A stretch of 64,000 nt of DNA from contig NC_091997.1 of the NCBI RefSeq assembly GCF_044704955.1, positions 85,746,001 to 85,810,000 on the forward strand, in the 5' to 3' direction. How positions within the stretch are numbered: the first letter of the stretch is position 1; every line of letters starts with the position of its first letter. The translations under genes and the position numbers were made by a program. A model generated the notes under the pieces. The model did no database searches. It was not told the origin of the DNA and saw only the letters and a program-made list of their open reading frames with translations. Positions 15,011 to 57,806 of the stretch are shown here, piece after piece. This DNA is from Pristiophorus japonicus (Eukaryota).

Positions 15011-15640
15011 ACACGACTGCCAAGTGTGTACTCACTATCACCGTGCTGCACAGTGGCATGCTCATAGAGTACACATTGTATTTCAGAGCCTCTCACTTCC
15101 CCAGTCCCTTCTGTGACTGGAGAGTTGAACAAACAGCCCAACCACTGTCCCCAGGCTCATTAATACAACATCAGTGCACACATATCATCTGAGTCATCCA
15201 TAAGTCTACTGCCCATTTCCTAACTTGCACCATGTCCCGTTCACCCATCAACCTGACCTACATTGGCTCCCGGTTAAGCAAAGCCTCGATTAAAAAATTC
15301 TCATCCTTGTTTTCAAATCCCTCAATGGCCTCGCCCCCTCCCTATCTCTGTAATCTCCTCCAGCCCCACAACCCCCAAGATATCTGCGGTCCTCTAATTC
15401 TAGCCTCTTGAGCATTCCCGACTTCAATCGCTCAGCTGCCAAGACCCAAAACTCTGGAATTCTCTCCATCAACCTCTCCGCCTCTCTAGCTCTCTTTCCT
15501 GCTTCAAGACTCTCCTCAAAACCTATCTCTTTCACCAAGCTTTTGGTCATCTGCCCTAATTTCTCCTTATGTGGCCTGGTGTCAAATGTTGTTTGTAACA
15601 CTCCTGTGAAGCGCCTTCTGACGTTTTTCTACATGAAAGG

Positions 15641-18600
15641 TGTTGTGTATCTGTAAAGCATGCACTCCCATGTTCCACCATCCCAGCATCCCTTGGGAAC
15701 ACTCTATATAAGCCGGCCCCTAAGGCTTGTTCCTCACTCTGGAGTGTCTGATTAAAGACTGAGGTCACTGTTACTTTAACCTCCCAGTGTGCAGCCTCAT
15801 AATAGGAACATAAGAACTGGTGACGAGAATACAAATCCAACGCAAAGATGCAACAAACTGTGGGCATCCTGGAGAAGTTCTCGGAGGGTGAGGACTGTGA
15901 AGCCTATGTTGAACGGCTAGACCAGTACTTTGTAGCCAACGAGCTGGACGGAGAAGGAAGCGCTGCAAAAAGGAGAGCGGTCCTCCTCATGGTCTGCGGG
16001 GCACCGACCTACAGCCTCATGAGGAATCTTCTGGCTCTGGTGCAACCCACAGATAAGTCGTATGAGGAGTTGTATACACTGGTTCGGGAGCATCTTAACT
16101 CGAGCGAGAGTGTGCTGATGGCGAGGTATCGGTTCTACACGTGCCAGCGATCTGAAGGTCAGGAAGTGGCGAGCTACGTCGCCAAGCTAAGGCAACTTGC
16201 AGGACAATGTGAGTTTGATGGCTACCTGGAGCAAATGCTCAGAGATCTTTTTGTACTGGGCATTGGCCACGAGACCATCCTATGAAAACTTTTGACTTAG
16301 AGACACCGACACTCAGTAAGGCCATTGCGATAGCACAGGCGTTTATGTCCACCAGTGATAACACCAAACAAATCTCTCAGTACACAAGTGCTAGCAATGT
16401 TCATAAATTAACTGCAACTGTGTTTGCGAGCAGAAATGTACAGGGCAGAACCCACGAGTCTGCAACTGCCAGCAGTCCTCAGGTGACCCAGATGACTCAG
16501 AGTCCCCAACAAAGGATGAATGCAAGGCAATTCACACCTTGTTGGCGTTGTGGTGGCTTCCATTCAGCCTATTCATGCCACTTCAAAGGGTATGTTTGCA
16601 AGAGCTATGGAACAATGGGGCACCTCCAATGAGCTTGCAAGCTCTGCAAAACCTGCTAACCACCACGTGGCAGAAGAAGATCAGTCCATGGTGGGTCAAA
16701 GCAATTTCGAGCCTCAGAGAGAGGAGGCAGGTGCTGAAGTACACGGGGTGCACACATTTTCAACATAATGCCCACCTATAATGCTAAACGTAAAATTGAA
16801 TGCCTTACCCGTAGCCATGGAACTGGACACTGGTGCTAGCCAATCTATCGTGAGCAAAAAGATGTTTCAGAGACTATGGTGCAACAAGGCATTCAGACCA
16901 GCCCTGAGCCCCATCTACATGAAACTGAGAACGTACACCAAAGAGCTTATCACTGTCCTGGGCAGCGCCATGGTCAAGGTCACCTACGAGGGCACGGTGC
17001 ACGCACTGCCACTCTGGATTGTCCCGGGCGATGGCCCCACACTGCTTGGAAGGAGCTAGCTGGGCAAAATCCGCTGGAACTGGAATGATATCCGAGCGCT
17101 ATCACATGTCAATGAGGCCTCATGTACCCAGGTTCTTAACAAATTTCCTTCCTTTTTTCAGCCAGGCATTGGAAACTTTTCCGGGGCGAAGGTGCGGATC
17201 CATTTGGTCCCAGAGGCAGGACCCATTCACCACAAGGCGCGAGCGGTACCTCACATGATGAGAGAGAGAGTGGAAATCGAGCTGGACAGGCTGCAATGCG
17301 AGGGCATCATCTCCCCAGTGGAATTCAGCGAGTGGGCCAGCCCGATTGTTCCAGTACTCAAAAGTGATGGCACGGTCAGGATTTGTGGCGATTATAAAGT
17401 AACTATTAATCGTTTCTCGCTACAGGACCAATATCCGCTACCTAAGGAAGACGACTTATTTGCGACACTGGCAGGAGGCAAGACGTTCACCAAGCTCAAC
17501 CTGACTTCAGCCTACATGACGCAGGAGCTGGAGGAGTCTTCGAAGGGCCTCATCTGCATCAACACTCACAAGGGACTGTTCATCGACAACAGATGCCCGT
17601 TTGGAATTTGGTTGGCTGCAGTGATTTTCCAGAGAAACATGGAGAGCCGACCCAAGTTGGTACCATAGACGGTGGTCTTTCAGGACGACGTATTGGTCAC
17701 GGGTTGGGACACCGCCAAGCACCTACAAAACCTGGAGGAGGTCCTCCAGCGACTGGATCGCATAGTGCTGCGGCTGAAGAGGTCGAAATGCGTCTTCATG
17801 GCAACAGAAGTGGAATTTTTGGGGAGAAAGATCACGGCGGACGGCATTCTGCCCACAGATGCCAAGACAGAGGCTATCAGGAACGCGCACAGGCCACAGA
17901 ACGTCATGGAGCTGCGGTCGTTCCTGGGACTCCTCAACTATTTTGGTAACTTCCTACTGGGGTTAAGCACTCTTTTAGAGCCCCTACATGTGTTGTTGCG
18001 CAAAGGTGAGAACTGGGTATGGGGAAAAAAACAAGTAATTGCTTTTGAGAAAGCCAGAAACATTTTATGCTCCAACAAGCTGCTTGTATTGTATAACCCG
18101 TGTAAAAGACTTGTGCTAGCATGTGACGCGTCGTCGTACGGAGTTGGGTGTGTATTACAACAAGCTAACGTTGCGGGGAAGTTGCAACCTGTCGCCTATG
18201 CTTCCAGGAGCTTGTCTAAGGCCGAGAGGGCCTACAGCATGATTGAGAAAGAGGCATTAGCGTGTGCGTTCGGAGTAAAGAAAATGCTTCAGTACCTGTT
18301 TGGCCTCAAATTTGAGCTGGAAACCGATCACAAGCCCCTCATATCCCTGTTCGCTGAAAACAAGGGGATAAATACTAATGCCTCAGCCCGCATACAAAGA
18401 TGGGCCCTTGTGCTATCAGCGTATAACTATACCATCTGCCACAGGCCAGGCAGCGAGAACTGTGCGGATGCTCTCAGTCGGCTACCATTGCCCACCACGC
18501 GGGGTGGAAATGGCGCAGCCTGCAAACTTGTTGATGGTGGCGCAGCCCGCAGACTTGTTGATGGTCATGGAAGCGTTTGATAAATGATAAATCACCTGTC

Positions 18601-19871: not shown

Positions 19872-19879
19872 AAAGGTGT

Positions 19880-20024
19880 TATATAAATACAAGTCGTTTT
19901 TAGTGTGGTTGAGTTGTTAAAAGAGGAAGAAGATTTCCTCTTTCATCACTTCTCTGTTTCTCTCACTGACCAGAATGTGATGGTGAAAGAGGCACCCAGC
20001 TTCTGAACGAGCTAGGAATGTGAA
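19880..20024 (+). promoter_or_regulatory. Putative proximal promoter of copy B with TATA-like, RUNX, ETS/PU.1 and IRF-ETS motifs
   Basis: tatataaa ~19880, TGTGGTT 19904-19910, GAGGAA 19923-19928, TTCCTCTTTC 19935-19944 (reverse complement GAAAGAGGAA); retained in copy C (~48001-48145). Motif matches only. Confidence 0.45.
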
Positions 20025-20079
20025 ATGGCGCTTGGTGCTCTGTTTGTGGGTCTTTTCCTTCTGTTCCAACATGTTGTAG
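20025..20079 (+). CDS. Copy B exon 1: signal peptide [18 protein letters not shown](G)
   Basis: 55 nt hydrophobic leader, AAATGG start context, phase-1 donor G|gtaagg matching the phase-1 acceptor of D1; identical in copy C. Confidence 0.85.
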
Positions 20080-23000
20080 GTAAGGATCCATACTTTCAAC
20101 TAATCCTCAACATGTTTATCTGGAAATATCAGTTTCTATCTGTACCTGAACGCGGAAATATAAGGATTGAAGGATATCGATTGCCATCAGTGCTGCTTTC
20201 ACGCGGATGTTTAATGTACTCATATGACAGTTGTTGCTGAGGCATTTTAACACGGTTTAATCATGGGTGGTCAGTTTAAAATTGGCACTAAGAGAGTGAG
20301 GAGACAGATTAGGAGAACATTTTTTACACAGAGGTTTGTTTTGCCACAGGCAGTGGTTGACGCAGAGACATTTTCATCTTTTGAAGGAAAACTGGAAAAC
20401 ATTTGAAGCAGAGGAAGATTTGGGGCTGTGGAGAGAGCGAGGCAATGGGTTTGCTCTGGCAAAGAGCCAGCACTGGCACGATGGGCCCAATTGCCTCCTT
20501 CTGTGCTGCAAACGTCTTTGGTTCAACTCCTGTCTTAAAACAGTGCAGGGATGAAATACAAGAACACTGCTGATCCTATCCCAATTTCCCTTACTGCAGA
20601 ACCATATCTCACTCTAAGAATGAAATAGTGGAAGATTTAGAAGAGTTAGAAGGATTTGCTGATGGGCTTTAATGGAGAGAGGGGGTGGGAAGTCCGTGCA
20701 GAGCATAAATGCGGCATGGAGCAGTTGGGCCGAATGGCCTGTTTCTGTGCCGAACATTCCATGTAATTCTGTGTAAGATTTTGTGCTCAGACTCGATCAT
20801 TGGGAACTCTGAAGTAACAATTATATTTGATGACTCAGCCGAGCCTCACACCATTAAAGGGTGGAGACCACACTGGGCGGGGCCCACGACACCACTCGGA
20901 CCAGGGCTCGAAATCAACACCACTGGCAAAATGGAGCAGCTCAGAGCTTTCTGTACATTACAGACCGTCCATTCCGCGATTGTTCTGTAAGGAAAGGGGA
21001 ACCGACACTGTGATTGGAGGGGGTGGGAGGGTTCCCAATCGAGACTGTCTATCCAGACTGTGTAAGGGGTGGGGGATGGTGACTCTATCCAGACTGTGTA
21101 ATGGAGCATTTCTAACCTGACTCTGTGAAATTTTAGGAGTGGGGTGGGTAGAAACAGATTCCGTGTAATATGAGCAGTCTGCAGGCAGACTCTGTTCCTG
21201 AAATGATAATTGACGTCTCCCCGATCGGTCCAAATCAGCATGGATTTATGAAAGGGAAATCATGCTTGACAAATCTTCTAGAATTTTTTGAGGATGTAAC
21301 TAGTAGAGTGGACAAGGGAGAACCAGTGGATGTGGTGTATTTGGACTTTCAAAAGGCTTTTGACAAGGTCCCACACAAGAGATTAGTGTGCAAAATTAAG
21401 GCACATGGGATTGGGGTAATGTATTAACGTGGTAGAGAACTGGTTGGCAGCCAGGATCAAAGAGTGGGAATAAACGGGTACTTTTCAGAATGGCAGGCAA
21501 TGACTAGTGAGGTACCGCAAGGTTCAGTGCTGGGACCCCAGCTATTTACAATATATATTAATGATTTGGACGAAGGAAATGAATGTAATATCTCCAAGTT
21601 TGCAGATGACACAGTGTGAGCTGCGAGGAGGATGCTAAGAGGCTGCAGGGTGACTTGGACAGGTTAGGTGAGTGGGCAAATGCATGGCAGATGCAGTATA
21701 CCGTGGATAAGTGTGAGGTTATGCACTTTGGTGGCAAAAACAGGAAGGCAGATTATTATCTAAATGGTGACAGATTAGTAAAAGGGGAGGTGCAACGAGA
21801 CCTGAGTGTCATGGTACATCAGTCAATGAAAGTAGGCATGCAGGTTCAGCAGACAGTAAAGAAAGCAAATGGCATGTTGGCCTTCATAGCGAGAGGATTT
21901 GAGTATAGGAGCAGGGAGGTCTTGCTGCAGTTGTACAGGGCCTTAGTGAGACCACACCTTGAGTATTATGTGCAGTTTTGGTCTCCTAATCTGAGGAAGG
22001 ACATTCTTGCTATTGAGGGAGTGCAGCGAAGGTTCACCAGACTGATTCCCGGGATAGCAGGACTGGCATATGAAGAAAGACTGGATCGACTAGGCTTATA
22101 TTCACTGGAATTTAGAAGAATGAGAGGGGATCTCATGGAAGCATATAAAATTCTGACGGGATTGGACAGGTTAAATGCAGGAAGAATGTTCCCGATGTTG
22201 GGGAAGTCCAGAACCAGGGGTCACAGTCTAAGGATTAGGGGTAAGCCATCTAGGACTGAGATGAGGAGAATCTTTTTCACCCAGAGAATTGTGAATGTAT
22301 GGAATTCTCTACCACAGAAAGTTGTTGAGTCCAGTTCGTTGGTTATATTCAAAAGGGAGTTAGATGTGGCCATTGCGGCTAAAGGGATCAGGACGTATAG
22401 AGAGAAGGCAGGAGTGGGGTACTGAGGTTGAATGACCTACTCCTGCACTTATTTTCTATGTTTCTGTATTTCTATCCTCAGTCTAAACATGGCTGATGTC
22501 TGAGTTACAACCGAGTCTGACGGAGATGTGGTTTGGTGTTTGTTCGAGCTCTGGTGCAATAATGATCTATAGTATAGACACATCTGGGTCAGTGAGTGGA
22601 GAGTTTCTAGGTGCAGTCTGTCAGGGCCATTACAGGGGGGGATTGCGTGTATCAGATGCTCAAGTTGTAAACACAAATCCCTATCAGCCGCTCCATGATA
22701 CCCAACCAATCAGAGCTCTGCTAACTTCTCCATCGCAGCTTATCATCTTAACCAGCAGGAAATGAGCTTCTGAACACAATGCAAGCAGAAATTATCGTTC
22801 TGACAATCTAGATGTGCTGATCAGAAATCTGTTCATTACAAGAAAAAAAGAAAGTCTTGCATTTCTATAGCACCTTCTACAACCTCACAATGTCCCAAAG
22901 CTATTTAAAGCCAATGAAGTACTTCTGAAGTGCAATCTCTGTTGATATGTAGAAAATGCGACAGCCCATTTTCACACAGCTAGGTCCCACAAACAGTAAA

Positions 23001-26000
23001 GTCTCATGTAAAAAAAACACACCTCTGACAGTATAGCACTCCCTCAGCACTGCACTGGGTGGTCGGCCTAGATTTTGTGCTCAAGTCTCTGGAGTGGGAC
23101 TTGAACCCACAACCTTCTGACATCAGAAGCGACAGTGCTACCCACTGAACCACAGTTGACATCATGACAACAAGAACTGGAACTCATAGAGAGCGCTTAA
23201 AGTGGGGCAGGGCCTTGTGGTGTTTTGCAAATGTGGAAGTGCGGGGAAGGACGTGAGCTCGAGGTAGGAGAAGAGTGAGTGGAAGTGGCAAAAGGCTCGG
23301 TTGGAGAGGTAAGTTTTAAAGAACCTTTTGCAGATGCCAAAGATGTGCCAAGGTGGAGGGTGAGGGGTTAAGGGAGAGAATAGCAGAGTGTGGGGCATAA
23401 AGGCTGAGGGCTGAGCAAGTGGTGAAGGTTAAGGTTTCTTAAATCAATGCAGTGGGCCACAGAGGAGGCCAAAGTCAGATGAGGCCATGGAAGGATTGGT
23501 ATTTATTTTTTTAAACCTTGGATGTGGTCGTCACTGGAAATGTCAGCATTTAGTCTCTAGTTTTCCTTGAGAAGGTGGTAGTGACCCTTCCTCTTGAACC
23601 GTTAAGTCCGTGTGGTGAACACTTTCCACAATGCTGGTAGCGAGGGAGTTTCAGGATTTTCATCCAGCGACGATGAAGGAACAGCATTATACTTACAAGT
23701 CAGGATGGTGTGTCACTTGGAGAACTTGTAGGTGATCATGCTCCCAAGCGTCTGCTGCCCTCGTTCTTCTATGTGGTAGAAGTCGTGGGTTTAGGAGGTG
23801 CTGTCGAAGAAGTCTTGGCAAGTTACTGCAGAGCATCTTGTAGATGGTACACACTGCAGCCATGTTGCGCCGGTGGTGGAGGGAGTGAATGCTGAAGGTG
23901 GTGGATGGGGTGCCAAAATGTGATCCTGTTTATCCTGGATGGTGTGGAGTTTCTTGAGTGTTGTCGCAGCTGCACTCACCCAGGCAAGTGGAGAGTGTTG
24001 TAGGGCGCTTTCAAGGCAAAGGCACCTGCTGAATATATGTATGTATGTGTAAAATTGTAGCCAGATATAAAATGGCTGCCCGGGATTCCGCAAAGCCCGA
24101 GGGGAATTCAGCTAACCAGTTTGACTAACTTTCTGGGTAGCTGATGACACTGCATTTCCTTGTACAGGAACACTGGAAAGGGAGAGCTCAGCAGATGTCC
24201 CGAATCAACAAACCTCAGACAAGATGTCCTAGCAGAATATTGAACAAAGGGATTCCTGTAACTGTGTTAAGATAAGGAGGTTAGGCACAGAACCCAAGGA
24301 CAATAAAGATAAGGAGGTCTGAAGAATATCACGAGGGCATGAGTAAGTTCCAGCTAAACATGAGATGATCATGCAGGCCCCTGGTGTCTGGGGGACCAAT
24401 TCTATTGGCCCAGAGGAATCGATTTGTAATCTATAATCCTTATGATTGGATTGTGTCCAGCCGACATAGGCTGCGTAATTGTAATGAACTGGTATAAAAC
24501 ATATAAATACTGATGAATTTCTTTGTTCAGCAGTGAGTAGTGCCTGGAGTAACCCAGAGGTTTTCTCCCCGCCGACGTAATAAAAACCGTTTTGATGATG
24601 GAACCGACTCAGAGTGACGAGTGATTCTTCCAGGATTTCATTCGCGCTAACAGAGAGTATTCCATCACACTCCTGACTTGTGCCTTGTAGGTGATGGAGA
24701 GAGTTTGGGGAGTCAGGAGGTGAGACACTCACCGCAGAATACCCAGCCTCTGACCACAGTATTTATGTAGCTGGTCCAGTTTTATTTTTGACCGATGATG
24801 ACCCCTGACCATCCCTCCCTCAGATGTTGATGGTGGAGGATTTGATGATGTAATGCCGTTGAATGTCAGGAAATGGTTAGACCCTTTCTTGTTGGAGATT
24901 GTCATTGCCTGGGACTTGTTGTGAATGGAGCTGAACACTGTGCAATCATCAGCGAATATTCACACTTCTGACCTTATGATGGAGGGAGGGTCATTGATGA
25001 AGCAGTTGAAGATGGTTGGGCCCAGGACATTGCCTTGAGGAAGCGTCCTAGGAGGGTAAAGAGCAGTTTTTAACTCAATGCCTTAGGGGGAGGTCAGTGA
25101 GGACAGGAGGGGTTGGTGAGTAGGATGCCATACGGGACAGGATGAAACCGATGAAGAAAGGATTGTAGATATCCATGTTCATGGAGATGAAATTGTGGAG
25201 GAGAGTTCTAGTGGCACTGAGAATGAGATAGGAATGGAAGCAGCAATCTTTGGGAGGTGAGTCATGACATCTGGTGGAGGGCTAGATGTGGGTTTGAGGT
25301 ACAGCTCAGGGTCAAATAGGTATAGTGGAGCTGAAGGGAATGGCTTTGCTTTTTCTGGGGAAAGGCCTGGTCTGTCTCGAACCTGATGCCAGCTAAGAAA
25401 TCGGACAGTACAGCACTGAGGACATTGATGGAGAGGTGAAGTGAGGTATCGACTTGGCTACGTATGGAAGCTGACTCCTTGATAATGTTCCTGAGAAATA
25501 GCATGTATATGTGGAATATAGGAGAGGACCAAGGATGGAGCCTTGGGTGGACATGGGGCGACCATTGCACACGGGAGGAGAACAATTCCTGAGGATGTGA
25601 GAAAGATAGGAGTGGATGTATTTAACAGCAGTGCCACAAAGGTGGGCCATTGGAGAACCATTGGAGAAGGTTCACTGTGTCAAGGGCCTTTAAGCTGTTG
25701 AGGAAGATAAGGAAGGATAATACACTATGGTTGTAAACACACAGGATATTGTTGTTAATTTTGATAAGGATGCGCTTATTTGTACTGCAAAAATGGCCAA
25801 CATGTTCCACCTTTTGTTTCTGATTGGTCCCCTTGGAGAATAAGCCACACCCTGAAGTTTCACAGGAATGTGTAACTGGAACCACCTATCCCAAGGTCTC
25901 ACTGACTTTGCAAATTGTAACTCGATCCACTTTGACTTCCTGAAGTGACAGAGGTCAGAGCTCCAAAGAAGATAGCAAGGGCCAACCAAAGTACCTTGCC

Positions 26001-29000
26001 CCAGTCCAAGTACATCCCTCCCCCAGCCGAAGGGTCTTACCCTAGTCCAAGTGCATGCCTCCCCCAGCCGAAGTGCCTTACCCTAGTCCAAGTGCATGCC
26101 TCCCCCAGCCAAAGTGCCTTGTCCCAGCGCAAGTACATCCACCCCCTTCCGCCCCATCCTCCCACACCATAGATGGGGCAGGGATTGTGTACGGATTGGT
26201 AACAGGTTTATTGGCTGTGAAGTGAATAGTGACAGTGTGGTGACTTCTGGATATCATTCACTCCAACGATGTCCCTTGTAGGGGGTTGGAAGAACATGAT
26301 CTGTCTTCCTTCCAATCATGTCTCTCCCCACAACTGCTCTCTCTCCCCACAGTCTCTCTCTCTCTCTACCCCCAATCTCTCTCTCTCTCTCTCTTCCCTC
26401 AATTTCTCTCTCCTCCCAGTCTCGCTCACTTTCCCGCTCCCCCCAGCCCCTCTCACCACCACCGCCCCAGTCTCTTTCTCCCCCTCCCCCCAGTCTCACT
26501 CTGCCTCTCGCTATCGCCCCCCACCAGCTGCTCTCGGGCCCACGCTGGTCGGAGGGAGGGTGGGCGGGTTCGGTGCCTCAGGTCCTGCGTCACGGCACCA
26601 CATGGATGGAATGATTTAGGCGGGGAGGGGGCAGAGCTTGACAGGGGCGGGGCTTGTCACCTGTCAGTCAAAAAAGTGCAGTATAGTCATGGGGGGCGGG
26701 GCTTGACAGACGCCTGTCTGTCAAAAAAAGTACAGTACAAATAGTTACATCGTTTTGATAAGGCTAGTCTTGCTGATCAGTGTCATTCAAACCATACACA
26801 TTGTCAACAAGCGTTAATGAAACAATTTGGAAGCTGTAAATTGACATCAAGTGGATACGCTAATTTACAGACTGTGGCAAAGAATTCTATGAAAGGAACA
26901 ATAAACTGGCCTATTACCAAGCCATTGTGCAGAGCATAATTTCCTATGAGAGGCTTTGTTTCACGTTGACTGTTTAATGAGCTTTCCTGTCTCTATCTCT
27001 ATCCCATTCTGCCCTTTCCCCGCAGGATCCACTTATCTCTTCTTCCTAAGACCAGGAGATGTCACCACTCTGCAATGCAACGTGCCCACCGGTGCTGGGA
27101 ATAAAGTAACCTTGTGCAACTCCAGTGATCCCGGGTCAGAAATGGGTAAAATAAAATGTAAGAACGAAAAGCCATGTTATGAAAATATCGGTCCTCAGGG
27201 GAAAAAAGGACACAGTGAGCCAGAGTGTACAAAATGCAAATTAAATGACCATGAAACGGAGTCTCTGACATTCGCTGTGAAGACGATTAACTCGATGGTG
27301 TTTACCTGCATGGCTCAAGATTCCACAGAAGGAGGGGCATTGGAGTGTCCGTCCTGGCTCACACTGTCACAGCCGGGATGTGAAAACCACGACTTGTTCT
27401 TTGTGATAACCCAGGATGGTAGGTGCACTGGGGCAATATCGCGGGAGGGATCGGGGCAGGTATTGGGGGAGGGATTGTTGTGGGAACATTAGGGGTAATT
27501 TAAGGTAAGGTATTAGGCGAGATATTAGAGGAGATATTAGAGAGACGTTGGGGAGATATTAGAAGAGGTTTTCGGGCAGATAGCTGTCATTGCCTTCATT
27601 AAGATGAAATTACCTTGTGTGTAGATAAAGAGTAATAGTGAGAAGTAGCTGGCACGGGTTTCAAACTGTCCAGGAGGTAAGAGACATGGTAGGTGGGGGA
27701 ATGCGGTGGATGCAGTGTACATGGACATTAGGAAATCCTTCGACTAAGTATCACATTGGAGATTATTATATTAACAAATATTCTTTTCAATGTTGTTTAT
27801 AGATTCAACTGATATATTTTTGATTAAAGAAAATTTGTCGCTGACAGTGTCAGAGGGAGAGAATGTGACTTTACCCTGCCAGTTTGAGAATATAAAACCA
27901 CTCCCCTTCACTCTGTTTTGGTTCAGATCTGGAAACGTCAACAAGTGTCTGCACTCTGTTCACACTGAGGATCATGCTGCACATTCTAACACACGTTGCT
28001 GTGTGGATAGAGAGTCATCACAAAGAATCTCTACCCAAAGCTCACACAATCCTTTGGTTAGCCGCCAGTCTCACAACCTTACTATTCACTCAGCGGGCCT
28101 GGTGGACACTGGGAGGTATCTCTGTGCTGTACACAGTCAGGATTCAGGGAAACCTGTCTGGAAGATTGCAGCAAACATCTCCCTTGTGACAGAGCCCAGT
28201 GCAGAAACTTCAGACACTCCCACCTCAACATCTGGAATATCCTCAGAGAGCAGCAGCATAACTTGTACAAATACTCAAAGTAAGTGATGCAATCTAAAAC
28301 ATAATGTGAACCATTTAATATCAATAATTCAAGGTGTGAGATTCCAGGTCCATTGTCCAGTTTGTACCCTTTAGAAGTTACTTTGATTTCCTTCCTTTGC
28401 CATTGCACTATTCTAGATTGTAACCAGAAAAGTATGTTCCTCAGCCCAGGTAACCAGTGTAATGAGCAGCAGGAAATCTTCAGACACTCCCACCTCAACA
28501 TCTGGAATATCCTCAGTGACCGGAAGCATTACTCCTACAAACATACAAAGTAAGTGATACAATCTAGAATATGATGTAAACCATTTTATATCAATAATTC
28601 AATATAAATAATATAAGTAATTCTTTCACACAATGTCCCAGACTCCTCCATCACCTTCCCAGGGTATGTCCGGTCCCACCGGCAGGACAGACCCACCAGA
28701 GGTGGCGGCACAGTGGTATACAGTTGGGAGATAGTGGTCCTGGGAGTCATAGAAACATAGAAACATAGAAAATAGGTGCAGGAGTAGGCCATTCGGCCCT
28801 TCAAGCCTGCACCGCCATTCAATGAGTTCATGGCTGAACATGAAACTTCAGTACCCCATTCCTGCTTTCTCGCCATACCCCTTGATCCCCCGAGTAGTAA
28901 GGACTACATCTAACTCCTTTTTGAATATATTTAGTGAATTGGCCTCAACAACTTTCTGTGGTAGAGAATTCCACGGGTTCACCACTCTCTGGGTGAAGAA

Positions 29001-29706
29001 GTTTCTCCTCATCTCGGTCCTAAATGGCTTACCCCTTATCCTTAGACTGTGACCCTTGGTTCTGGACTTCCCCAACATTGGGAACATTCTTCCTGCATCT
29101 AACCTGTCTAAACCCATCAGAATTTTAAACGTTTCTATGAGATCCCCTCTCATTCTTCTGAACTCCTCAACATTGACTCCCTAACATCGTAAAGTCTCAT
29201 GGCATCAGGTCAAACATGGGCAAGGAAACCTCCTGCTGATTACCACCAACCGCCCTCCCTCAGTTGATAAATCAGTACTCCTCCATGTTGAACAGCACTT
29301 GGAAGAAGCACTGAGTGGTTCGGTAGCACCACTACTGACCGACCTAGCCTCGTCCTGAAGGACATCCTTGCCAGACTGGGCCTATGGCAGATGGTGAAAG
29401 AACCAACATGAGGGAAAAACATACATGACCACATCCTCACCAATCTACCTGTCACAGATGCATCTGTCCATGACAGTATTGGAAAGAGTGACCACTGCAC
29501 AGTCCTTGTGGAGACAAAGTCCCATCTTCACACTAAGGACACCCCTGCATCATGTTGTGTGGGTCTACCACTGTACTAAATGGGATCTCAGTGTCAGTAT
29601 TCTATGGACAAATACGTAAGCTGCTCCAAGATTAATGTGCTCATCTAAACTGCGATCTCTGAAAACCAGGGAGGTCCTGAGGGAGGGAGGGAAGGGGTCA
29701 GTAGGA

Positions 29707-29741
<35 letters not shown>

Positions 29742-32700
29742 AGGCCTGTGCAGCAGAGCCTAGTCTCCAATCATCTTGGGTCCCCTTGCCATTGGACCAA
29801 GACCCAGCTCTGTCAAGTCTGTGTGGTGGCTGGTGTGCAACGGCCACCCCATATTAAAAGGATTTATGGTGCATAGGCATCTTCCACCCTTTAAAATGAA
29901 GTTCGAGATCTGGCCCGCATTAGTCTCATCAGTCACCTTAGAACTCATTTTAGTGTGGAAGCAAGTCATGCTCAACTCCGGGGCACTGCCTAAGAAGAGA
30001 GAAGAAGAAATGGGATAGATTCAGAAAAGACCTTGCAGATAAAACTGGGCATTCATGAGGGCCATCATCAGCAGCAGAATTGTATTCCACAACAATCTGT
30101 GACCTCATGTCCCGGCATATCCCTCACTCTACCATTACAATTAAGCCAGGGGACCAACCCTGGTTCAATGAAGCGTGTAAAAGAGCATGCCAGGAGCAGC
30201 ACCAAGCACACCTAAAAATGAGGTGCCAACCTGCTGTAGCTACACTACATGCATGCTAAACAGCACATGCAGCATGCTATAGGCAGAGTGAAGCGATTCC
30301 ACAACCAACGGATCAGATCAAAGCTCTGCAGTCCTGCCACATGCAGTCATGAATGGTGGTGGACAATTAAACAACTAAGGGGAAGAGGCTCCATGAACAT
30401 CCCCATCCTCCATGATGGCAAAGCCAGCACGTGAGTGCAAAAGACAAGCAGAAGTGTTTGCAACCATCTTCAGCCAGAAGTGGTGTGCGGATGATTCATC
30501 TCGGCCTCCTCCGGAGGTCCCCAATATCACAGAAAACAGTCTTCAGCCAATTTGATTCACTCCATGTCATATCAAGAAATAGCTGACGCACTGGATACGG
30601 CAAAGTCTATGGGCCCCGACAGTATCCCGACTGCAGTGCTGAAGACTTTTGTCCCACAACTTACCCTGCCTCTATCCAAGCTGTTCCATTAAAGCTACAT
30701 CACTGGCGTCTACCCAACAAAGTGGAGAATTGCCCAGGTATGTATGTTCATGATTGCAGTCTTCTGTTCCATTTGCAACCCCTCAGATAATAAAGCAGTC
30801 CATGTCTGTATGCAGCAAGACCTGGACAACATTCAGACTTTGACTGATAAGTGGCAAGTAACATTTGCGCAACACAAGTGCCAGGGAATGACCATCTCCA
30901 ACAAGAGAGAGTCTAACCACCTTCACTTGATATTCAACGGCATTACCTTCACTGAATCCCCACCATCAACTTCCTAGGGGTCAGCATTGACCAGAAACTT
31001 AACTGGACCAGTCACATAATTGCTGTGGCTAGAAGAGCAGGTCAGAGGCTGGGTATTCTGTGGCGAGTGTCTCACCTCCTGACTCCCCAAAGTCTTTCCA
31101 CCATCTACAAGGCACAAGTCAGGAGTGTGATGGAATGATGAGTTGAGCTCCAACAATTTGATGCTCGACACCATCAGGATTAAGGAGCCTGCTTGATTTG
31201 CATTCCAACCACATGTTAAACGTTCACTCCCTCCACAACCAGCGTACCGTGGCTGCAGTGTGTACCATCCACGATGCACTGCAGCAACTCACCAAGGCTT
31301 CTTCGGCAGCACCTCCCAAACCCGTGACCTCCACCATGTAGAAGATCAAGGGCAGTAGAATGGATTGTGACTTGGAGAGGAACATCCTCATCTCCAAGTT
31401 CCCCTCAGTCACACACCATCCTGACTTGTAAATATATCACTGATCTTTTATCGTCGCTGGTCAAAATCTTGGAACTCCCTCTCTAACAGCACTGTGGGAG
31501 TACCTTCATCACGTGGACTGCAGCGGTTCAAGAAGGTGGCTCACCACCACCTTCTCACGGGCAATAAGAGATGGGCAATAAATTTTGGCCTTGTCAATGA
31601 TGCCCACATCCCATGACTGAATACAACAGAAATTAAGCGAGAGATTCAAGAGCAATTGTCCACTTTGTACCCATTAGACGTTGGTTCGATTTTCTTCCTT
31701 CGCAATTGCACTTTTCCAGATTGTAACAGAAAAGTATCTTCCTCGGCCCAGGTAACCAGTGTGATCAGCTGTACATATAAGACGGCATTGCACAAACTGA
31801 ACTTAATGTTGCTTCTCCTATGCATTTCCAGACCCTGCCATCACTGTGAACGTAGCCATAGTGTGTCTGATTGTACTCATTTGCATTGTTGGGATAGTTT
31901 GCATTATTGGGGTAGTTTGCCGAAGGAAACGACAATCTGTCAAAGGTAAAGGTAAGCAAGAGCGTTAAAATGTTTGATCTAAATCTATAAAATTGTAAGA
32001 GCAGATTCCTTACATAGATTCTTACATTTATCTTTCCCATCTTACGGCATGTGTTGTGAAGGATCCTCAGCACCAGGACCCAGGTAGGGATGGGATTTGA
32101 TCAGTATTTCGGCAGACTTTCTGTATAATTTTGCTCATTTAATGGAACATTTACAGGTTACTTTTCTTTGCTAACTGTAGGGCCGGTGATGTGCAGCTGA
32201 CACAAGTGGCTGAATGTAAGTGACTAGAATTGCTGGCCAGCTCTTCCGATCCTGGCCCTTTGAGAGTTGAAACTAAAAGCACACATGGTGTTCCCGCCCT
32301 TCTGTCCAGGTTTCCCGTACTCTGTGGTTCCCAGGAAGGATCAGAGCGATGACAACGAGCCTGTTGCGTACTCGGTGACAAGAGTTCCAACGCCGTCGAG
32401 CCAGCCAAGGCCTGGTGAAGGAATGGAGAGCACTGGCCCAAACATTGACTCTACAGAGCATGTGTACTGTTTGATCGAGGAGTCAATGGTCAAAGGGTAA
32501 GCAGAGTGACAGCTGTCACCCCTCGGCTACGGTCAACACTGACCACAACTTTGTTTTAGGATGGAGGGTTAGAAGATCGTTAATGTAATGAAGGTGAGGG
32601 GAGCCCATGCTGGCAAATGGGTTACTTTTCCACTTTGGCCACACAGTATCACTTGGAGCACTCCAGATTAGGCACAGCGTAAAACTCCCTCTGGACTGTC

Positions 32701-35526
32701 CCAACAATGTTCCTCAACTCCAAGGTCAGGAGAGAGGTCAGACATCTTCACTTCTCACACCTCATGTCCTGTTTGAGTGGAAGGGCCAATTTAGAGGTAG
32801 TTTTGTACTGTGGCTCACATGAGCTGCAAACTGGATCGAGATGACCAAATTAATTTCATCAAGGACCATGAGAGAAAATGTGAGAGAAAGAAAGAGACAG
32901 AGAAAGACAGAGACAGAGACAGACAGTGATAGGTTCAGACAGAGACTGCGACAGAGACAGACAGACAGTGATAGATTCAGATAGAGACTGACCTGATATT
33001 GGAATAAAGGAGCACTATCAGAAAAGCATCACAGTGCCCTTATGAAGTTATCTTTTTTTTTTAAACTCTCTCAGGACAATATTTTGGCATATGTGACCAT
33101 AGTGATCAATTTCGTCCAAATATTTTACTGAATGATTGGCAGTTTTAGGCAAGGAATTGGATTGAGGCTGAACACTCTTTGCAGAGAGGACAGCTTACAT
33201 AGCAGACTCAGAGAGATAAAGAGAGATATGGAGACAGTAACAGAGACACAGAGAGACAGAGAGAGACAGAGAGAGACAGACAGAGAGCAACACAAAGAGA
33301 GAAAGAGAAAGAGAGACAGTGTTTTGGATCGATAATAATAGACCCAGGTTCGGGATCTGGGTGAATGTTAAATAATAGATAAGACAAATGAAGTAAAGAA
33401 TTAAATACTGTTTACTGAGGGAAAAGAAATATTAATAAAAAAGTTTACGAAGAAAAGAGAAGTATGATAAGATGCAACAACGCTGACGGCCTTCGGCCTG
33501 TCGGGAACTCTGCAACGACGGCTGGTCTGGAGCCTTGGGGGTCCCGGCACCGCTCGCGAATCGCGGTCCAAGGTGAAGTTCGAAGAGCTAAGGGACAGTG
33601 CCGCTCCTTTATACTATTAAACAAAACATGGGTGCATGTGGCTTATGGCCAACTCCTAATCTGTAACACCCCAGCTGCTTGTCCACAAAGCATGAGATCT
33701 CGAGGCGCCGACAGTCTCATAATAAGCTGGTGTGCATCTCAAGATCGCTTCCCTCTCTCTCTCTCTATAGCAACAACAATCCACGAAGCATGGAGCAGAA
33801 ACACACTGTAAATGACTAAATATCATAATTAACTTTATGTGATTAACCCTCTACAATCGAGACGGAGATAGACAGTGAGACGGGGATCGAATAACAGACA
33901 GAGAGCGAGAAACAGAGACAGAGAGAGANNNNNNNNNNNNNNNNNNNNNNNNNNNNNNNNNNNNNNNNNNNNNNNNNNNNNNNNNNNNNNNNNNNNNNNN
34001 NNNNNNNNNNNNNNNNNNNNNNNNNNNNNNNNNNNNNNNNNNNNNNNNNNNNNNNNNNNNNNNNNNNNNNNNNNNNNNNNNNNNNNNNNNNNNNNNNNNN
34101 NNNNNNNNNNNNNNNNNNNNNNNNNNNNNNNNNNNNNNNNNNNNNNNNNNNNNNNNNNNNNNNNNNNNNNNNNNNNNNNNGACAGAGACAGGCAGAGAGA
34201 CAGCGAGAGAGAGAGAGAGAGAGAGAGAGTCAGCGAGACAGGAAGAGAGAGACAGAGACAGGCAGCGAGNNNNNNNNNNNNNNNNNNNNNNNNNNNNNNN
34301 NNNNNNNNNNNNNNNNNNNNNNNNNNNNNNNNNNNNNNNNNNNNNNNNNNNNNNNNNNNNNNNNNNNNNNNNNNNNNNNNNNNNNNNNNNNNNNNNNNNN
34401 NNNNNNNNNNNNNNNNNNNNNNNNNNNNNNNNNNNNNNNNNNNNNNNNNNNNNNNNNNNNNNNNNNNNNNNNNNNNNNNNNNNGCATAGAGAGAGACAGG
34501 GAGAGACGGTGATAGGCAGAGAGAGAGAGACAGAAAGAGAGAGACGGAGACAGATAGAAACAGCGAGAAAGAGAGAGAGACAGGCAAAGAGAGACAGAGA
34601 CACAGAGAGACTCAGAGCGAGAGAGAGAAAGAGGCAGGCAGAGCGAGACAGAGAGAGAGACAGGGAGAGAGACCGAGAGAGAGAGATAGATGGAGAGAAA
34701 GAGAAAGAAACAGAGAGAAAGAGAATCGGTGAGACAATCCGAGAGTCAGAGAGTGACAGACAGAGTAACAGACAGAGAGTGACAGACAGAGAATGACAGA
34801 CAGAGTAACAGACAGAGAGTGACAGACAGAGAGTGACAGACAGAGTGACAGACAGAGAGTGACAGACAGAGAGTGACAGTCAGAGAGTGACAGACAGAGA
34901 GTGACAGACAGAGAGTGACAGACAGAGTGACAGTCAGAGAGTGACAGTCAGAGAGTGACAGACAGAGAGTGACAGACAGAGAGTGACAGACAGAATCAGG
35001 GAAAATGAATGAGGGAATTTCAGGCTGGGTTAGACTGAAATCCAGGCCAGTGGGGAGAAAGTGACTGAATGTAGTTTCCACTTACAGCTGTTTAATATTG
35101 TTTGAATCATATGTTACTCATTTTTCACACATTTAATTTTCTGTTTTCCCAGTGATGACGGCAAAACTGAAATCCAGGCAGTAAAATGTAAGTCGTGGCA
35201 ATCTTTCAGTATCTTTCATTATCTGTCCCCACATGGAAGTGAAACCCTCTTAATTTCTAGGCAGTGACCGCACGGACCATGTACCGCAGGTTGAAACCTC
35301 TTTAGCCATTGAACTCAAACCAGACGGCCAATCGCAGCCCAAAGAGGACAGTAAGGAGGATCCCGTTGCTCTGTCTAATGAGCAGACTTATTCTTTGATA
35401 GGTTGCCCGGGGACAGGGAGCCCAGGAGACACGGAGACAAGGTCTTGGCTGGAGGAAGATGATCCACAACCTGGCCCGTTAGAGATGGAAGAAAATCCTA
35501 TTTATGCTAAAATAGAGGAAGCCTGA
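20025..35526 (+). CDS. Copy B, complete spliced gene: type I transmembrane two-Ig-domain receptor with multi-tyrosine tail (~540 aa). Exons 20025-20079, 27026-27418, 27803-28279, 28417-28449, 31832-31951 (or -31945), 32062-32083, 32181-32215, 32310-32496, 35153-35187, 35261-35526
   Basis: All introns are GT-AG and phases chain consistently (1,1,1,1,1,2,1,2,1). The sum is 1623 nt with no internal stop. Order is signal peptide, Ig-like, IgV, stalk, TM, tail. Stalk exon choice is uncertain. Confidence 0.8.
21223..22475 (+). mobile_element. 5'-truncated CR1 LINE in intron 1 of copy B
   Basis: ORFs 21170-21427 and 21616-22425 (RT and C-terminus); empty site in copy C near 49245. Confidence 0.92.
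22850..23160 (-). mobile_element. Shark-type tRNA-derived SINE (HE1-like), decayed
   Basis: Reverse of tRNA-like head (gggttcaagtcccactccagagacttgagc) and ctatagaaatgcaag tail; family name from recall. Confidence 0.6.
23510..25040 (-). mobile_element. Decayed LINE 3' fragment, same family as 28640-31630, interrupted by a solo LTR
   Basis: Reverse-complement similarity to 30760-31620. Confidence 0.7.
23996..24652 (+). mobile_element. Solo LTR (657 bp)
   Basis: TGT...ACA ends, 5-bp TSD GAGAG (23991-23995, 24653-24657), TATA (~24492) and AATAAA (~24578); host LINE is contiguous once removed. Confidence 0.8.
27026..27418 (+). CDS. Copy B D1 exon: Cys-rich atypical Ig-like domain (PGDVTTLQC...MVFTC)
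   Basis: Polypyrimidine tract + cag acceptor, donor G|gtaggt, 393 nt phase 1-1, open frame, 9 Cys. Confidence 0.8.
27803..28279 (+). CDS. Copy B D2 exon: V-set Ig domain plus Ser/Thr stalk
   Basis: [25 protein letters not shown]-set motifs; acceptor tttatag|, donor A|gtaagt; 477 nt phase 1-1. Confidence 0.9.
28640..31630 (+). mobile_element. Decayed LINE (endonuclease-RT remnants) in the stalk intron of copy B, with nested CR1 3' end (28749-29165, minus) and SINE-like insert (29587-30007)
   Basis: Absent in copies A and C; the nested insert is flanked by AAATGGGAT direct repeats and contains (GT)n and an (AAG)n tail. Confidence 0.75.
31832..31951 (+). CDS. Copy B TM exon (D)[39 protein letters not shown]
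   Basis: Acceptor catttccag|, ~23 hydrophobic residues then RRKR stop-transfer; tandem in-frame donors after 31945 and 31951. Confidence 0.88.
32062..32496 (+). CDS. Copy B proximal cytoplasmic exons: 22 nt (32062-32083), 35 nt (32181-32215), 187 nt (32310-32496); contain FPYSVV, VAYSVT, HVYCLI
   Basis: 22+35 nt microexons together keep frame ([20 protein letters not shown]); GT-AG boundaries, though the 22-nt exon has a weak AAG acceptor. Confidence 0.75.
33870..34995. repeat. GA-rich and (GACAGAGAGTGACA)-type microsatellite with N runs; homologous tract 63120-64000
   Basis: Directly visible low-complexity sequence. Confidence 0.95.
35153..35526 (+). CDS. Copy B terminal cytoplasmic exons: 35 nt (35153-35187) and 266 nt (35261-35526), ending EQTYSLIGC...[13 protein letters not shown]
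   Basis: Acceptors ttttcccag| and tttctag|, donor T|gtaagt; phases 2 and 1 match the upstream exon; not in the ORF track. Confidence 0.78.
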
Positions 35527-47992: not shown

Positions 47993-48145
47993 AAAGGTGT
48001 TATATAAATACAAGTCGTTTTTACTGTGGTTGAGTTGTTAAAAGAGGAAGAGGATTTCCTCTTTCATCACTTCTCTGTTTCTCTCACTGACCAGAATGTG
48101 ATGGTGAAAGAGGCACCCAGCTTCTGAACCAGCTAGGAATGTGAA

Positions 48146-57100: not shown

Positions 57101-57806
57101 CACAAACTGAACTTAATGTTGCTTCTCCTCTGCATTTCCAGACCCTGCCATCACTGTGAACGTAGCCATAGTGTGTCTGATTGTACTCATTTGCATTGTT
57201 GGGATAGTTTGCATTATTGGGGTAGTTTGCCGAAGGAAACGACAATCTGCCAAAGGTAAAGGTAAGCAAGAGCGTTAAAATGTTTGATCTAAATCTATAA
57301 AATTGTAAGAGCAGACTCCTTACATAGATTCTTACATTTATCTTTCCCATCTTACGGCATGTGTTGTGAAGGATCCTCAGCACCAGGACCCAGGTAGGGA
57401 TGGGATTTGATCAGTATTTCGGCAGACTTTCTGTATAATTTTGCTCATTTAATGGAACATTTACAGGTTACTTTTCTTTGCTAACTGTAGGGCCGGTGAT
57501 GTGCAGCTGACACAAGTGGCTGAATGTAAGTGACTAGAATTGCTGGCCAACTCTTCCGATCCTGGCCCTTTGAGAGTTGAAACTAAAAGCATGGTGTTCC
57601 CGCCCTTCTGTCCAGGTTTCCCGTACTCTGTGGTTCCCAGGAAGGATCAGAGCGATGACAACGAGCCTGTTGCGTATTCGGTGACAAGAGTTCCAACGCC
57701 GTCGAGCCAGCCAAGGCCTGGTGAAGGAATGGAGAGCACTGGCCCAAACATTGACTCTACAGAGCATGTGTACTGTTTGATCGAGGAGTCAATGGTCAAA
57801 GGGTAA
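48146..57806 (+). CDS. Copy C (terminal exons expected beyond 64000). Exons 48146-48200, 55078-55479, 56131-56595, 56732-56764 and/or 57029-57061, 57142-57261, 57372-57393, 57491-57525, 57616-57802
   Basis: Leader identical to copy B; D1, D2, TM and tail translations identical to copy A; downstream intron sequence (62424-64000) matches copy B 33164 onward. Confidence 0.82.
49361..53490 (+). mobile_element. PIF/Harbinger DNA transposon, decayed: DDE transposase 50252-51451 (+, frameshifted) and convergent partial second gene 52056-53430 (-)
   Basis: [45 protein letters not shown]1-like motifs; left end GGGGCCAAGTTTC; second gene acidic/Pro-rich with 60-bp repeats (52320-52660); right end not found. 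Confidence 0.88.

What the first reader, a model, noticed from the sequence alone, without database searches (positions are those of the whole stretch)
20025..35526. Hidden tandem family of two-Ig-domain immune-type receptors with a long multi-tyrosine tail
Seen: ten exons over 15.5 kb join in phase into a stop-free ~540 aa type I membrane protein, and the unit occurs three times (A 1444-4175, B, C 48146-57806). Established: phase-1 Ig exons, short cytoplasmic exons with YxxI/V motifs and tandem clustering are typical of leukocyte receptor families (CD300/TREM, LILR, SIRP, fish NITR, skate MDIR). Inference: the pairing of a Cys-rich atypical D1 with a 5-Cys IgV and this tail fits none of those as I know them, so it may be an undescribed chondrichthyan regulatory receptor family.
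Basis: partly seen in the sequence, partly recalled or inferred. Interest (0 to 1): 0.9.

Follow-up and report, generated by a model that had tools for sequence, protein, structure and literature searches.

The report
Shark two-domain Ig receptor gene array
The stretch is a real, spliced gene of the Japanese sawshark for a cell-surface receptor with an unclassifiable cysteine-rich outer domain, one antibody-like V domain and a tyrosine-rich tail; public databases already predict it as "uncharacterized protein", and in my searches its unnamed family turned up only in sharks.

Summary
Ten exons (20025-35526, all AG/GT, phases fit) join into one 564-aa open frame. It is letter-for-letter UniRef "uncharacterized protein isoform X1" of Pristiophorus japonicus, so the gene is not hidden. 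The two assembly gaps lie in intron 8, inside an (AGAGAC)n repeat, not in coding sequence. A public run holds spliced contigs across five junctions, plus one that runs from the end of exon 8 into exon 9, across the gaps.

Three tandem units are present. Only B is complete in the window; A lacks exons 9-10, and C runs off the window end.

D2 is a V-set Ig domain. D1, with nine conserved Cys, has no Pfam or PDB match and AlphaFold does not fold it.

Searches with D1, with a full-length profile and with the tail found only shark proteins, all unnamed. Sharks also carry short-tailed relatives with Asp or Asn in the membrane span, which gives a paired-receptor layout.

The tail has four invariant Tyr motifs, including a C-terminal NPIY, and no consensus ITIM in this copy. 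An immune regulatory role is inferred, not shown.

This scan reported the same family twice before on adjacent DNA. One of those notes claimed a range "to echidna", which I could not reproduce.

The parts
20025..20079 (+). Exon 1 of copy B: start codon and signal peptide ([19 protein letters not shown]), ends in phase 1, donor GTAAGG
   Evidence: identical to residues 1-19 of P0034
27026..27418 (+). Exon 2: D1, 131 codons, phase 1-1, nine Cys conserved across sharks; fold unknown
   Evidence: no Pfam/PDB hit; AF2 pLDDT 30; phmmer finds only shark proteins
27803..28279 (+). Exon 3: D2, V-set Ig domain with five invariant Cys, plus the start of the Ser/Thr stalk; phase 1-1
   Evidence: Pfam V-set 8.6e-8, 32.8 bits against a cut-off of 26; AF2 beta-sandwich with pLDDT 60-86; Foldseek TCR V-alpha/PD-1 at E~1e-7; spliced joints 27418>27803 and 28279>28445 in run X7
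28445..28549 (+). Exon 4: second Ser/Thr-rich stalk exon, phase 1-1
   Evidence: joint 28279>28445
28640..31641 (.). About 3 kb of transposon-derived DNA inserted in intron 4 of copy B, absent from copies A and C
   Evidence: self-BLAST; very high repeat depth in all four runs
31832..31951 (+). Exon 5: transmembrane helix ([23 protein letters not shown]) and RRKRQ stop-transfer; a second in-phase donor lies at 31945
   Evidence: joint 31951>32062 in X7; AF2 helix
32062..32083 (+). Exon 6: 22-nt cytoplasmic micro-exon (GSSAPGPR)
   Evidence: joints on both sides in X7
32181..32215 (+). Exon 7: 35-nt cytoplasmic micro-exon ([11 protein letters not shown])
   Evidence: joints 32083>32181 and 32215>32310
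32310..32496 (+). Exon 8: cytoplasmic, carries Y1 (FPYSVV), Y2 (VAYSVT) and Y3 (HVYCLI)
   Evidence: joint 32215>32310 in X7 and X8; loose end behind 32496 equals the start of exon 9
33929..34483 (.). Two assembly gaps (33929-34180 and 34270-34483) inside intron 8, embedded in AGAGAC-type tandem repeats; not filled
35153..35187 (+). Exon 9: 35-nt cytoplasmic exon ([11 protein letters not shown])
   Evidence: X7 loose end
35261..35526 (+). Exon 10: Y4 (TYSLIG), acidic stretch, Y5 in [13 protein letters not shown], stop TGA; an internal alternative acceptor at 35402 removes Y4 in isoform P0040
1444..4171 (+). Copy A: D1 (1444-1845, F-strand Cys replaced by Phe), D2 (2500-2964), stalk, TM (3511-3630), micro-exons, exon 8 (3985-4171); no exons 9-10
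17163..17255 (+). Substitute last exon used by public isoform P0027 of the A-type copy (…MVKG-QALETFPGRR…), in transposon-rich flank
48146..57802 (+). Copy C: exon 1 (48146-48200) to exon 8 (57616-57802); 99.76% identical to copy A where both are present; last exons lie beyond the window end and its gaps

Best explanation
Copy B is an intact, transcribed member of a shark-specific multigene family of type I membrane receptors. Shown: a signal peptide, a 130-aa nine-Cys outer domain (D1) of unknown fold, a V-set Ig domain (D2) next to the membrane, a Ser/Thr-rich (probably O-glycosylated) stalk, one TM helix and a 191-aa acidic tail. Also shown: the tail has four Tyr motifs invariant across sharks, VAY(S/A)VT, TEHVYC(L/V)(I/L), YSxI and MEENPIY, plus a membrane-proximal YSVV that is a consensus ITIM in about half of the species. 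Also shown: the genes sit in a tandem array of ~28-kb units, and between paralogues the ectodomain exons and their introns differ by 6-17% with dN/dS about 1, while the TM/tail half is 98-100% identical. Also shown: sharks keep a second, short-tailed subtype with Asp or Asn in the TM. Inferred mechanism: the variable D1-D2 head binds a ligand, then Src-family kinases phosphorylate the tail. The phosphorylated NPIY docks PTB-domain adaptors (Dok/Shc type, as in CD200R and integrin beta tails), and the YxxI/V sites dock SH2 phosphatases or related effectors. The long form therefore acts as the regulatory, probably inhibitory, half of a paired receptor system, and the short form is its counterpart.
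For: Gene reality: the frame and splice sites fit; the model is identical to P0034; run X7 has spliced contigs at junctions 2-3, 3-4, 5-6, 6-7 and 7-8 and an exon 8>9 continuation. Domains: Pfam V-set; AF2 and Foldseek for D2; TM helix. Conservation of the Tyr motifs in 9-10 shark species from both shark superorders. Family range and lack of a name. Paired layout: the short-tail TM type shares 17-23 of 30 residues across species but only 8-14 of 30 with the same species' long type, while the whole-protein tree groups long and short forms by species, i.e. ectodomains are homogenised within species. Diversification: dN/dS is 0.82 in D1 and 1.2 in D2, with D2 changes clustered at residues 28-36 and 53-64. 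NPxY as a PTB-docking inhibitory motif: PMC8007030, PMC6827421 and PMC4479986.
Against: There are no tissue or cell-type expression data, so 'immune' rests on family-style features only. Copy B has no consensus ITIM, ITSM or ITAM. NPxY and YxxPhi are also sorting signals. The charged TM residue of the short forms is acidic, not the Lys/Arg that known DAP12/FcRgamma-coupled activating partners carry. Exons 8-10 are identical among paralogues, so the contig spanning the gaps may come from a sister copy. The dN/dS values rest on 20 and 40 substitutions.
Confidence: 0.55

Rival explanations
1. It is an endocytic or phagocytic uptake receptor. NPIY and the three or four YxxPhi motifs would serve as clathrin-adaptor sorting signals (as in the LDLR/LRP family) or as engulfment signals (as in Draper/MEGF10/PEAR1, which combine NPxY and YxxL), rather than as inhibitory docking sites.
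For: Regex on the tails finds NPxY plus YSVV, YCLI, YSLI and YAKI, and no consensus ITIM/ITSM/ITAM in this copy. PMC8007030 notes that NPxY motifs mostly mediate trafficking. The roles of these motifs in LDLR and Draper are from established knowledge.
Against: The paired long/short layout, the tandem expansion, fast ectodomain change and a predicted soluble isoform are typical of immune regulatory families. Y1 is a consensus ITIM in five of ten species. The invariant residues around each Tyr (TEHVYC, MEENPIY) go beyond what sorting motifs need.
Confidence: 0.2
2. It is a highly diverged shark branch of a known vertebrate family. The best candidate is CD200R-like: a two-domain receptor with an NPxY tail preceded by an acidic stretch and with paired activating relatives.
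For: The tail reads ...[19 protein letters not shown], i.e. an acidic run about 14-17 residues before the NPxY Tyr, loosely like the EEDE...NPLY arrangement described for CD200R. Language-model neighbours of D1 include a 'CD200 receptor 1-like' V-set cluster at 0.90. An earlier scan note (s1-874700) claimed relatives as far as echidna.
Against: The D1 phmmer search over 1.84 billion representatives, a full-length profile search and a tail-only search returned only shark proteins. The V-set domain is membrane-proximal here, whereas CD200R is V then C2 (recalled). The CD200R positions Y286, Y289 and K292 have no counterpart. An Atlas score of 0.90 is reached by 4-10% of shuffled proteins.
Confidence: 0.1
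3. It is an annotation or assembly artefact: a pseudogene stitched together across gaps, with the extra copies being assembly duplications.
For: There are two gaps in intron 8. Copies A and C are 99.76% identical over 7.2 kb, which could be a duplicated assembly of one locus.
Against: The frame is open through ten exons, spliced contigs exist in a public run, all junctions are conserved in other sharks, and copy B differs from A/C by 6-10% in D1 and D2.
Confidence: 0.03

Closest known systems
Paired IgSF immune receptor families (SIRP, CD200R/CD200RL, KIR/LILR, CEACAM1/3; teleost NITR and LITR)
   Same: Type I membrane proteins in tandem arrays. Long-tail members carry Tyr motifs and short-tail members carry a polar or charged TM residue. 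Ectodomains are kept alike within a species while TM/tail types are old. The ligand-facing loops diverge quickly.
   Different: No sequence relationship to any of them was found. The outer domain is unclassifiable. The charged TM residue of the short forms is Asp/Asn, not Lys/Arg. This copy has no consensus ITIM.
CD200 receptor 1
   Same: Two extracellular domains. An inhibitory-type tail that works through NPxY and a PTB adaptor rather than an ITIM, with an acidic run upstream of the NPxY. Has paired relatives.
   Different: The domain order differs (V-set next to the membrane here). Y286, Y289 and K292 are absent. No hit outside sharks appeared in three searches.
TCR V-alpha and PD-1 V domains (nearest solved structures to D2)
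   Same: V-set beta-sandwich; Foldseek E about 1e-7 and TM 0.65-0.76 normalised to the target; profile E 1e-4 to 1e-2.
   Different: Only 20-26% identity. D2 has three extra invariant Cys (C48, C65, C66 of the exon), an 82-residue B-F spacing and no J-like FGxG motif.
Skate MDIR / CD300 / TREM / pIgR-type V domains
   Same: Germline-encoded V-type domains in multigene immune-type receptor families of cartilaginous fish and other vertebrates.
   Different: As I recall it, that group is marked by a Cys directly after the C-strand Trp, paired with a C' Cys. D2 has Phe after the Trp and a different Cys set. No MDIR-like protein appeared among the hits.
Integrin beta-1 membrane-proximal NPIY; Draper/MEGF10/PEAR1 and LDLR NPxY tails
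   Same: The same short motif (E-N-P-I-Y), known to bind PTB/FERM-F3 domains (Dok1, talin) or sorting adaptors (PMC6827421, PMC4479986).
   Different: Motif-level resemblance only; the ectodomains are unrelated.

Membership tests
Immunoglobulin superfamily, V-set (Pfam PF07686) | Domain scores above the Pfam gathering threshold | tested here: met
   D2 exon: 32.8 bits against a cut-off of 26, E 8.6e-8; all 9 family members scanned match
Immunoglobulin superfamily, V-set (Pfam PF07686) | Two-sheet beta-sandwich with a B-F disulfide and C'/C'' strands | tested here: met
   AF2 model of D2 has pLDDT 60-86 and nine strands. Best Foldseek matches are TCR V-alpha and PD-1. Cys25 and Cys107 of the exon are invariant.
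Immunoglobulin superfamily (for D1) | Detectable Ig profile match or Ig fold | tested here: inconclusive
   No Pfam hit at E<=1. No PDB sequence hit at E<=10. hhalign against the D2 profile gives P 0.6. AF2 pLDDT is 30 alone and 20-27 in the full-length model. In favour: a phase 1-1 exon, B-like 'TLQC' and F-like 'VFTC' motifs 77 residues apart, and language-model neighbours that are V-set at 0.90-0.95.
NITR (teleost novel immune-type receptors) | N-terminal V domain ending in a J-like FGxGTxL motif (as I recall the definition) | tested here: not met
   Neither D1 nor D2 contains FGxG. The D2 G strand reads [14 protein letters not shown]. No teleost protein appears among the hits.
CD300 / TREM / pIgR / skate MDIR type V domains | Extra disulfide from a Cys directly after the C-strand Trp to a C' Cys (recalled definition) | tested here: not met
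   D2 reads [11 protein letters not shown], with no Cys after the Trp; its extra Cys are C48, C65 and C66
LILR / KIR / LITR type receptors | C2/I-type Ig domains of about 95 aa | tested here: not met
   D2 is V-set with an 82-residue B-F spacing
ITIM-bearing inhibitory receptors | At least one [SIVL]xYxx[IVL] in the tail | tested here: not met
   Regex on copy B finds none: FPYSVV, VAYSVT, HVYCLI, TYSLI, PIYAKI. Y1 is a consensus ITIM in Carcharodon, Heterodontus, Rhincodon, Stegostoma and Hemiscyllium.
ITAM / ITSM receptors | Yxx[LI]x6-12Yxx[LI], or TxYxx[VI] | tested here: not met
   None in any of the ten long tails
CD200R family | Tail NPxY with conserved upstream acidic stretch, P285, Y286, Y289 and K/R292 (PMC8007030) | tested here: inconclusive
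   The NPIY and an upstream EEDD run are present. The two upstream Tyr and the K/R at -5 are absent in copy B. No direct alignment with a CD200R sequence was possible.
CD200R family | V then C2 ectodomain, and sequence homology | tested here: not met
   The V-set domain is membrane-proximal. No CD200R-named protein appears among the hits of three searches.
Paired (long-tail / short-tail) receptor system | Sister genes with like ectodomains, one with a signalling tail and one with a short tail and a charged TM residue | tested here: met
   Short forms P0021, P0002, P0020, P0025 (Asp) and P0004 (Asn) against the long forms; species-wise grouping of ectodomains. The short type is not encoded in this window.

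The most novel reading that the evidence does not exclude
The family is a shark-only paired receptor system of reversed polarity. Its short-tailed members carry an acidic TM residue, so they would couple to a still unknown signalling partner with a basic TM residue, or would intercept basic-TM receptors. Its nine-Cys outer domain would be a new extracellular fold, perhaps tied to the V domain by an interdomain disulfide, since both domains have an odd number of conserved Cys.
Probability: 0.15. Interest if true: 0.75.

Novelty: new variant of a known kind. Interest (0 to 1): 0.45.

Why it matters
Sharks are the oldest living lineage with antibody/TCR/MHC immunity, yet few of their germline-encoded regulatory receptor families have been described. 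This family dates to before the split of the two shark superorders and is expanded in tandem. It has long and short partners, an outer domain without any recognisable relative, and a tail that relies on NPxY and non-canonical Tyr motifs.

If it is an immune receptor, it would be one more independent case of a lineage-specific paired receptor system. The Asp in the short forms' membrane span would also raise the question of which adaptor they use.

For genome annotation, it would give a name and a domain map to about two dozen "uncharacterized" or misnamed ("serine-rich adhesin for platelets-like", "GPI-anchored protein pfl2") shark proteins.

Tried and rejected
- D1 structure: AF2 on a 21-row alignment gave pLDDT 30. 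In the full-length model D1 stayed at 20-27. No fold search of D1 was therefore meaningful.
- D1 against D2 by profile-profile alignment: no relation.
- D1 against PDB sequences: zero hits at E<=10.
- Protein Atlas: V-set neighbours at 0.90-0.95, a lead only.
Orthologous loci, synteny and domain-only alignments by reference could therefore not be made.
- 'Family reaches echidna' (scan note s1-874700): not reproduced by the D1 phmmer search, the full-length profile or the tail-only search.
- CD28-family membership: the paper lists only single-V receptors and none of the motifs seen here. Rejected.
- Literature: no paper on this family or on its LOC identifiers.
- The runs guessed to be RNA (X1, X5) covered only the transposon part, apart from one orthologue-like D1-D2 joint in X5.
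- The exon 4>5 joint was not among the joints listed (22 were not shown). Junctions 1>2 and 9>10 lay outside the stretch laid.
- The joined ten-exon translation was not sent to any search tool. Searches went exon by exon by reference, or used public protein ids. The join was made only inside a script, to check the frame and compare with public proteins.
- The gaps were not filled.
Full report
**What the window is**

The window has 47.7% G+C, CpG observed/expected of 0.48 and four N runs. Its exons match predicted proteins of Pristiophorus japonicus (Japanese sawshark) at 100%.

A self-comparison shows a tandem duplication with units of about 28 kb:
- 1-7210 equals 53635-60842 at 99.76%.
- 7209-17385 equals 39429-47655 at 95-98%.
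- 19758-21012 equals 47879-49133 at 98%.

The DNA between and inside the genes is LINE reverse transcriptase/endonuclease, Ty3-like pol fragments and a Harbinger-type DDE transposase. No other host gene is in the window.

**The observation**

I rebuilt the model from the sequence and checked it in a script. Ten exons join with AG/GT at every junction: 20025-20079, 27026-27418, 27803-28279, 28445-28549, 31832-31951, 32062-32083, 32181-32215, 32310-32496, 35153-35187 and 35261-35526. The extracellular and TM exons are all phase 1-1. The sum is 1695 nt, giving 564 residues and one terminal stop.

The product has:
- a signal peptide;
- D1 with nine Cys;
- D2 with five Cys;
- five N-glycosylation sequons;
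- a stalk that is 54% Ser/Thr;
- one TM helix;
- a 191-residue acidic tail with five Tyr.

D1 and D2 were searched by reference, and full-length searches used public protein ids. The join was made only in scripts.

**The gaps**

Both gaps (33929-34180 and 34270-34483) lie in intron 8. They sit between AGAGAC-type tandem repeats that continue on either side. Copy C has gaps at the matching place.

Three lines of evidence link exon 8 to exons 9-10:
- Public models join them (P0034, P0001).
- Every long-tailed orthologue has the same continuous sequence.
- A contig of run X7 ends exon 8 at 32496 and runs on with the first 30 letters of exon 9.

One caveat applies. Exons 8-10 are identical among paralogues, so that contig cannot be assigned to copy B alone.

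**Transcription**

Run X7 (2024, kind not on record) holds GT..AG joints at these junctions:
- 27418>27803
- 28279>28445
- 31951>32062
- 32083>32181
- 32215>32310 (also in X8)

X7 also holds unspliced pieces. It shows no differing letter over the copy-B-specific part of D1. A contig of X5, from another organism, joins D1 to a D2 start typical of other sharks.

That test is therefore passed for five junctions, and for a sixth (exon 8>9) by the continuation contig. Junctions 1>2, 4>5 and 9>10 rest on the public models only.

**It is not hidden**

P0034 ("uncharacterized protein isoform X1", UniRef100_UPI00398F31E1) is identical to the model. Other public isoforms of the same gene:
- P0051 and P0015 skip the TM exon in frame, which predicts a soluble form.
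- P0001 and P0024 skip D2.
- P0040 uses an internal acceptor at 35402 that removes Y4.

**The copies**

Copy A (1444-4171) and copy C (48146-57802) are nearly identical to each other. Both differ from copy B as follows:

| Region | Nucleotide identity to B | Amino-acid changes | dN/dS |
|---|---|---|---|
| D1 | 93.8% | 15 of 130, including the F-strand-like Cys to Phe | 0.82 |
| D2 | 89.6% | 29 of 153, clustered at exon residues 28-36 and 53-64 | 1.2 |
| TM-to-exon-8 half | 98-100% | 1 | not meaningful |

The introns follow the same split: intron 2 is 83-93% identical and introns 5-7 are 98.6% identical. The contrast therefore reflects a mosaic history (gene conversion or unequal exchange of the 3' half), not only selection on the protein.

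Copy A has no exons 9-10. A public isoform (P0027) ends instead in a 93-nt exon at 17163-17255, in transposon-rich flank. Copy C's last exons lie beyond the window.

**Domains**

D2 is a V-set Ig domain:
- Pfam gives 32.8 bits against a cut-off of 26.
- AF2 gives a beta-sandwich at pLDDT 60-86.
- The best solved neighbours are TCR V-alpha, PD-1, sialoadhesin and CD96 V domains at E about 1e-7 and 20-26% identity. This is generic resemblance, not a family link.

D1 is unresolved:
- It has no Pfam or PDB match.
- It shows no profile relation to D2.
- AF2 gives no confident fold, alone or in context.
- Features that hint at an Ig-like domain are its phase 1-1 exon, the 'TLQC ... VFTC' pair 77 residues apart, and protein-language-model neighbours that are V-set clusters at 0.90-0.95. 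The tool itself rates those scores as a lead only.

All nine Cys of D1 and all five of D2 are conserved across sharks. Two odd numbers suggest an interdomain or interchain disulfide. This is inference.

**Range of the family**

Three searches returned only selachian sharks:
- A phmmer search with D1 against 1.84 billion representatives found five clusters.
- A full-length protein search and a nine-species profile found 23-24 proteins.
- A tail-only search found 12.

The species are Pristiophorus, Heptranchias, Heterodontus, Carcharodon, Cetorhinus, Scyliorhinus (two species), Mustelus, Rhincodon, Stegostoma, Chiloscyllium (two species) and Hemiscyllium. No skate, ray, chimaera or bony vertebrate appeared. 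All are "uncharacterized" or carry automatic misnomers.

The family is thus at least as old as the split between squalomorph and galeomorph sharks.

I could not reproduce that. Another note (s1-876467: about a dozen sharks, inhibitory half of a paired system) agrees with what I found. Both concern adjacent DNA, so the scan has seen this array before.

**Paired layout**

Across species there are two TM/tail types:
- Long type: TM ...IVC.VVLICIVGVICII, a tail of 160-190 residues with 5-8 Tyr, ending in NPIY.
- Short type: ...SCSxMR..LVLY.V.LIC[ILS][DN]G..CII, a tail of 18-39 residues with no Tyr. The TM residue is Asp in four species and Asn in one.

Short-type TMs share 17-23 of 30 residues between species, but only 8-14 of 30 with the long type of the same species. 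The whole-protein tree nevertheless groups long and short forms by species with strong support.

This combination of old TM/tail types and ectodomains homogenised within species is the pattern known from SIRP, KIR and CEACAM paired receptors (established knowledge). The short type is not encoded in this window.

**Tail**

Invariant across ten long forms:
- V-A-Y-(S/A)-V-T
- T-E-H-V-Y-C
- Y-S-x-I
- M-E-E-N-P-I-Y

Y1 is [LV]xYxxV, a consensus ITIM, in five species. It is FPYSVV here and is lost in Heptranchias. No ITSM or ITAM is present.

NPxY motifs dock PTB domains. In CD200R this motif, not an ITIM, carries inhibition through Dok2 (PMC8007030). In integrin beta tails the same E-N-P-I-Y binds talin or Dok1 (PMC6827421 and PMC4479986). 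The same motifs can also act as sorting signals, which gives the main rival reading.

**Verdict**

This is a real, expressed and already predicted gene. It belongs to an unnamed paired IgSF receptor family that my searches found only in sharks, with an unclassifiable outer domain.

The kind of system is familiar, but the architecture and the acidic TM partner are unusual. A regulatory immune function is likely but unproven.

Noticed in passing
not in this window; proteins P0021, P0002, P0020, P0025, P0004: Short-tailed members of the family carry Asp (four species) or Asn (Mustelus) in the C-terminal half of the TM helix. Known activating partners of paired receptors have Lys/Arg there. The partner of these short forms is unknown.
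   Followed up: partly
window 17163-17255 (also 47433-47525): The A-type copy, which lacks exons 9-10, is predicted (P0027) to splice exon 8 to a 93-nt terminal exon in transposon-rich flank. This gives a tail without Y4 and without NPIY.
   Followed up: partly
window 1-7210 and 53635-60842: Copies A and C are 99.76% identical over 7.2 kb, while both differ from B by 6-10% in D1 and D2. This is either a very recent duplication or conversion, or a duplicated assembly of one unit.
   Followed up: no
window 27419-27802 versus 31952-32309: Between paralogues, intron 2 is 83-93% identical while introns 5-7 are 98.6% identical. The contrast between the variable head and the constant tail is therefore also present in non-coding DNA, which points to a recombination mosaic.
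   Followed up: yes
window 31945 / 31951: Two in-phase GT donors lie 6 nt apart at the end of the TM exon. Copy B transcripts use 31951 (…SVKGK-G), while the A-type protein P0013 lacks the two extra residues.
   Followed up: partly
window 31832-31951 (TM exon) and public isoforms P0051/P0015: Skipping the 120-nt phase 1-1 TM exon keeps the frame. It predicts a secreted form in which the ectodomain is fused to the 'cytoplasmic' sequence.
   Followed up: no
window 50558-51451: An intact-looking 297-aa Harbinger/PIF-type DDE transposase ORF (DDE_Tnp_4, E 2.8e-36) lies in intron 1 of copy C and is absent from copy B.
   Followed up: no
protein P0002 (Heptranchias perlo, 683 aa): A public model with the D1-D2 pair repeated twice before a short-type TM. 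It is either a four-domain member or two neighbouring genes fused by the annotation pipeline. It is auto-named 'serine-rich adhesin for platelets-like'.
   Followed up: no
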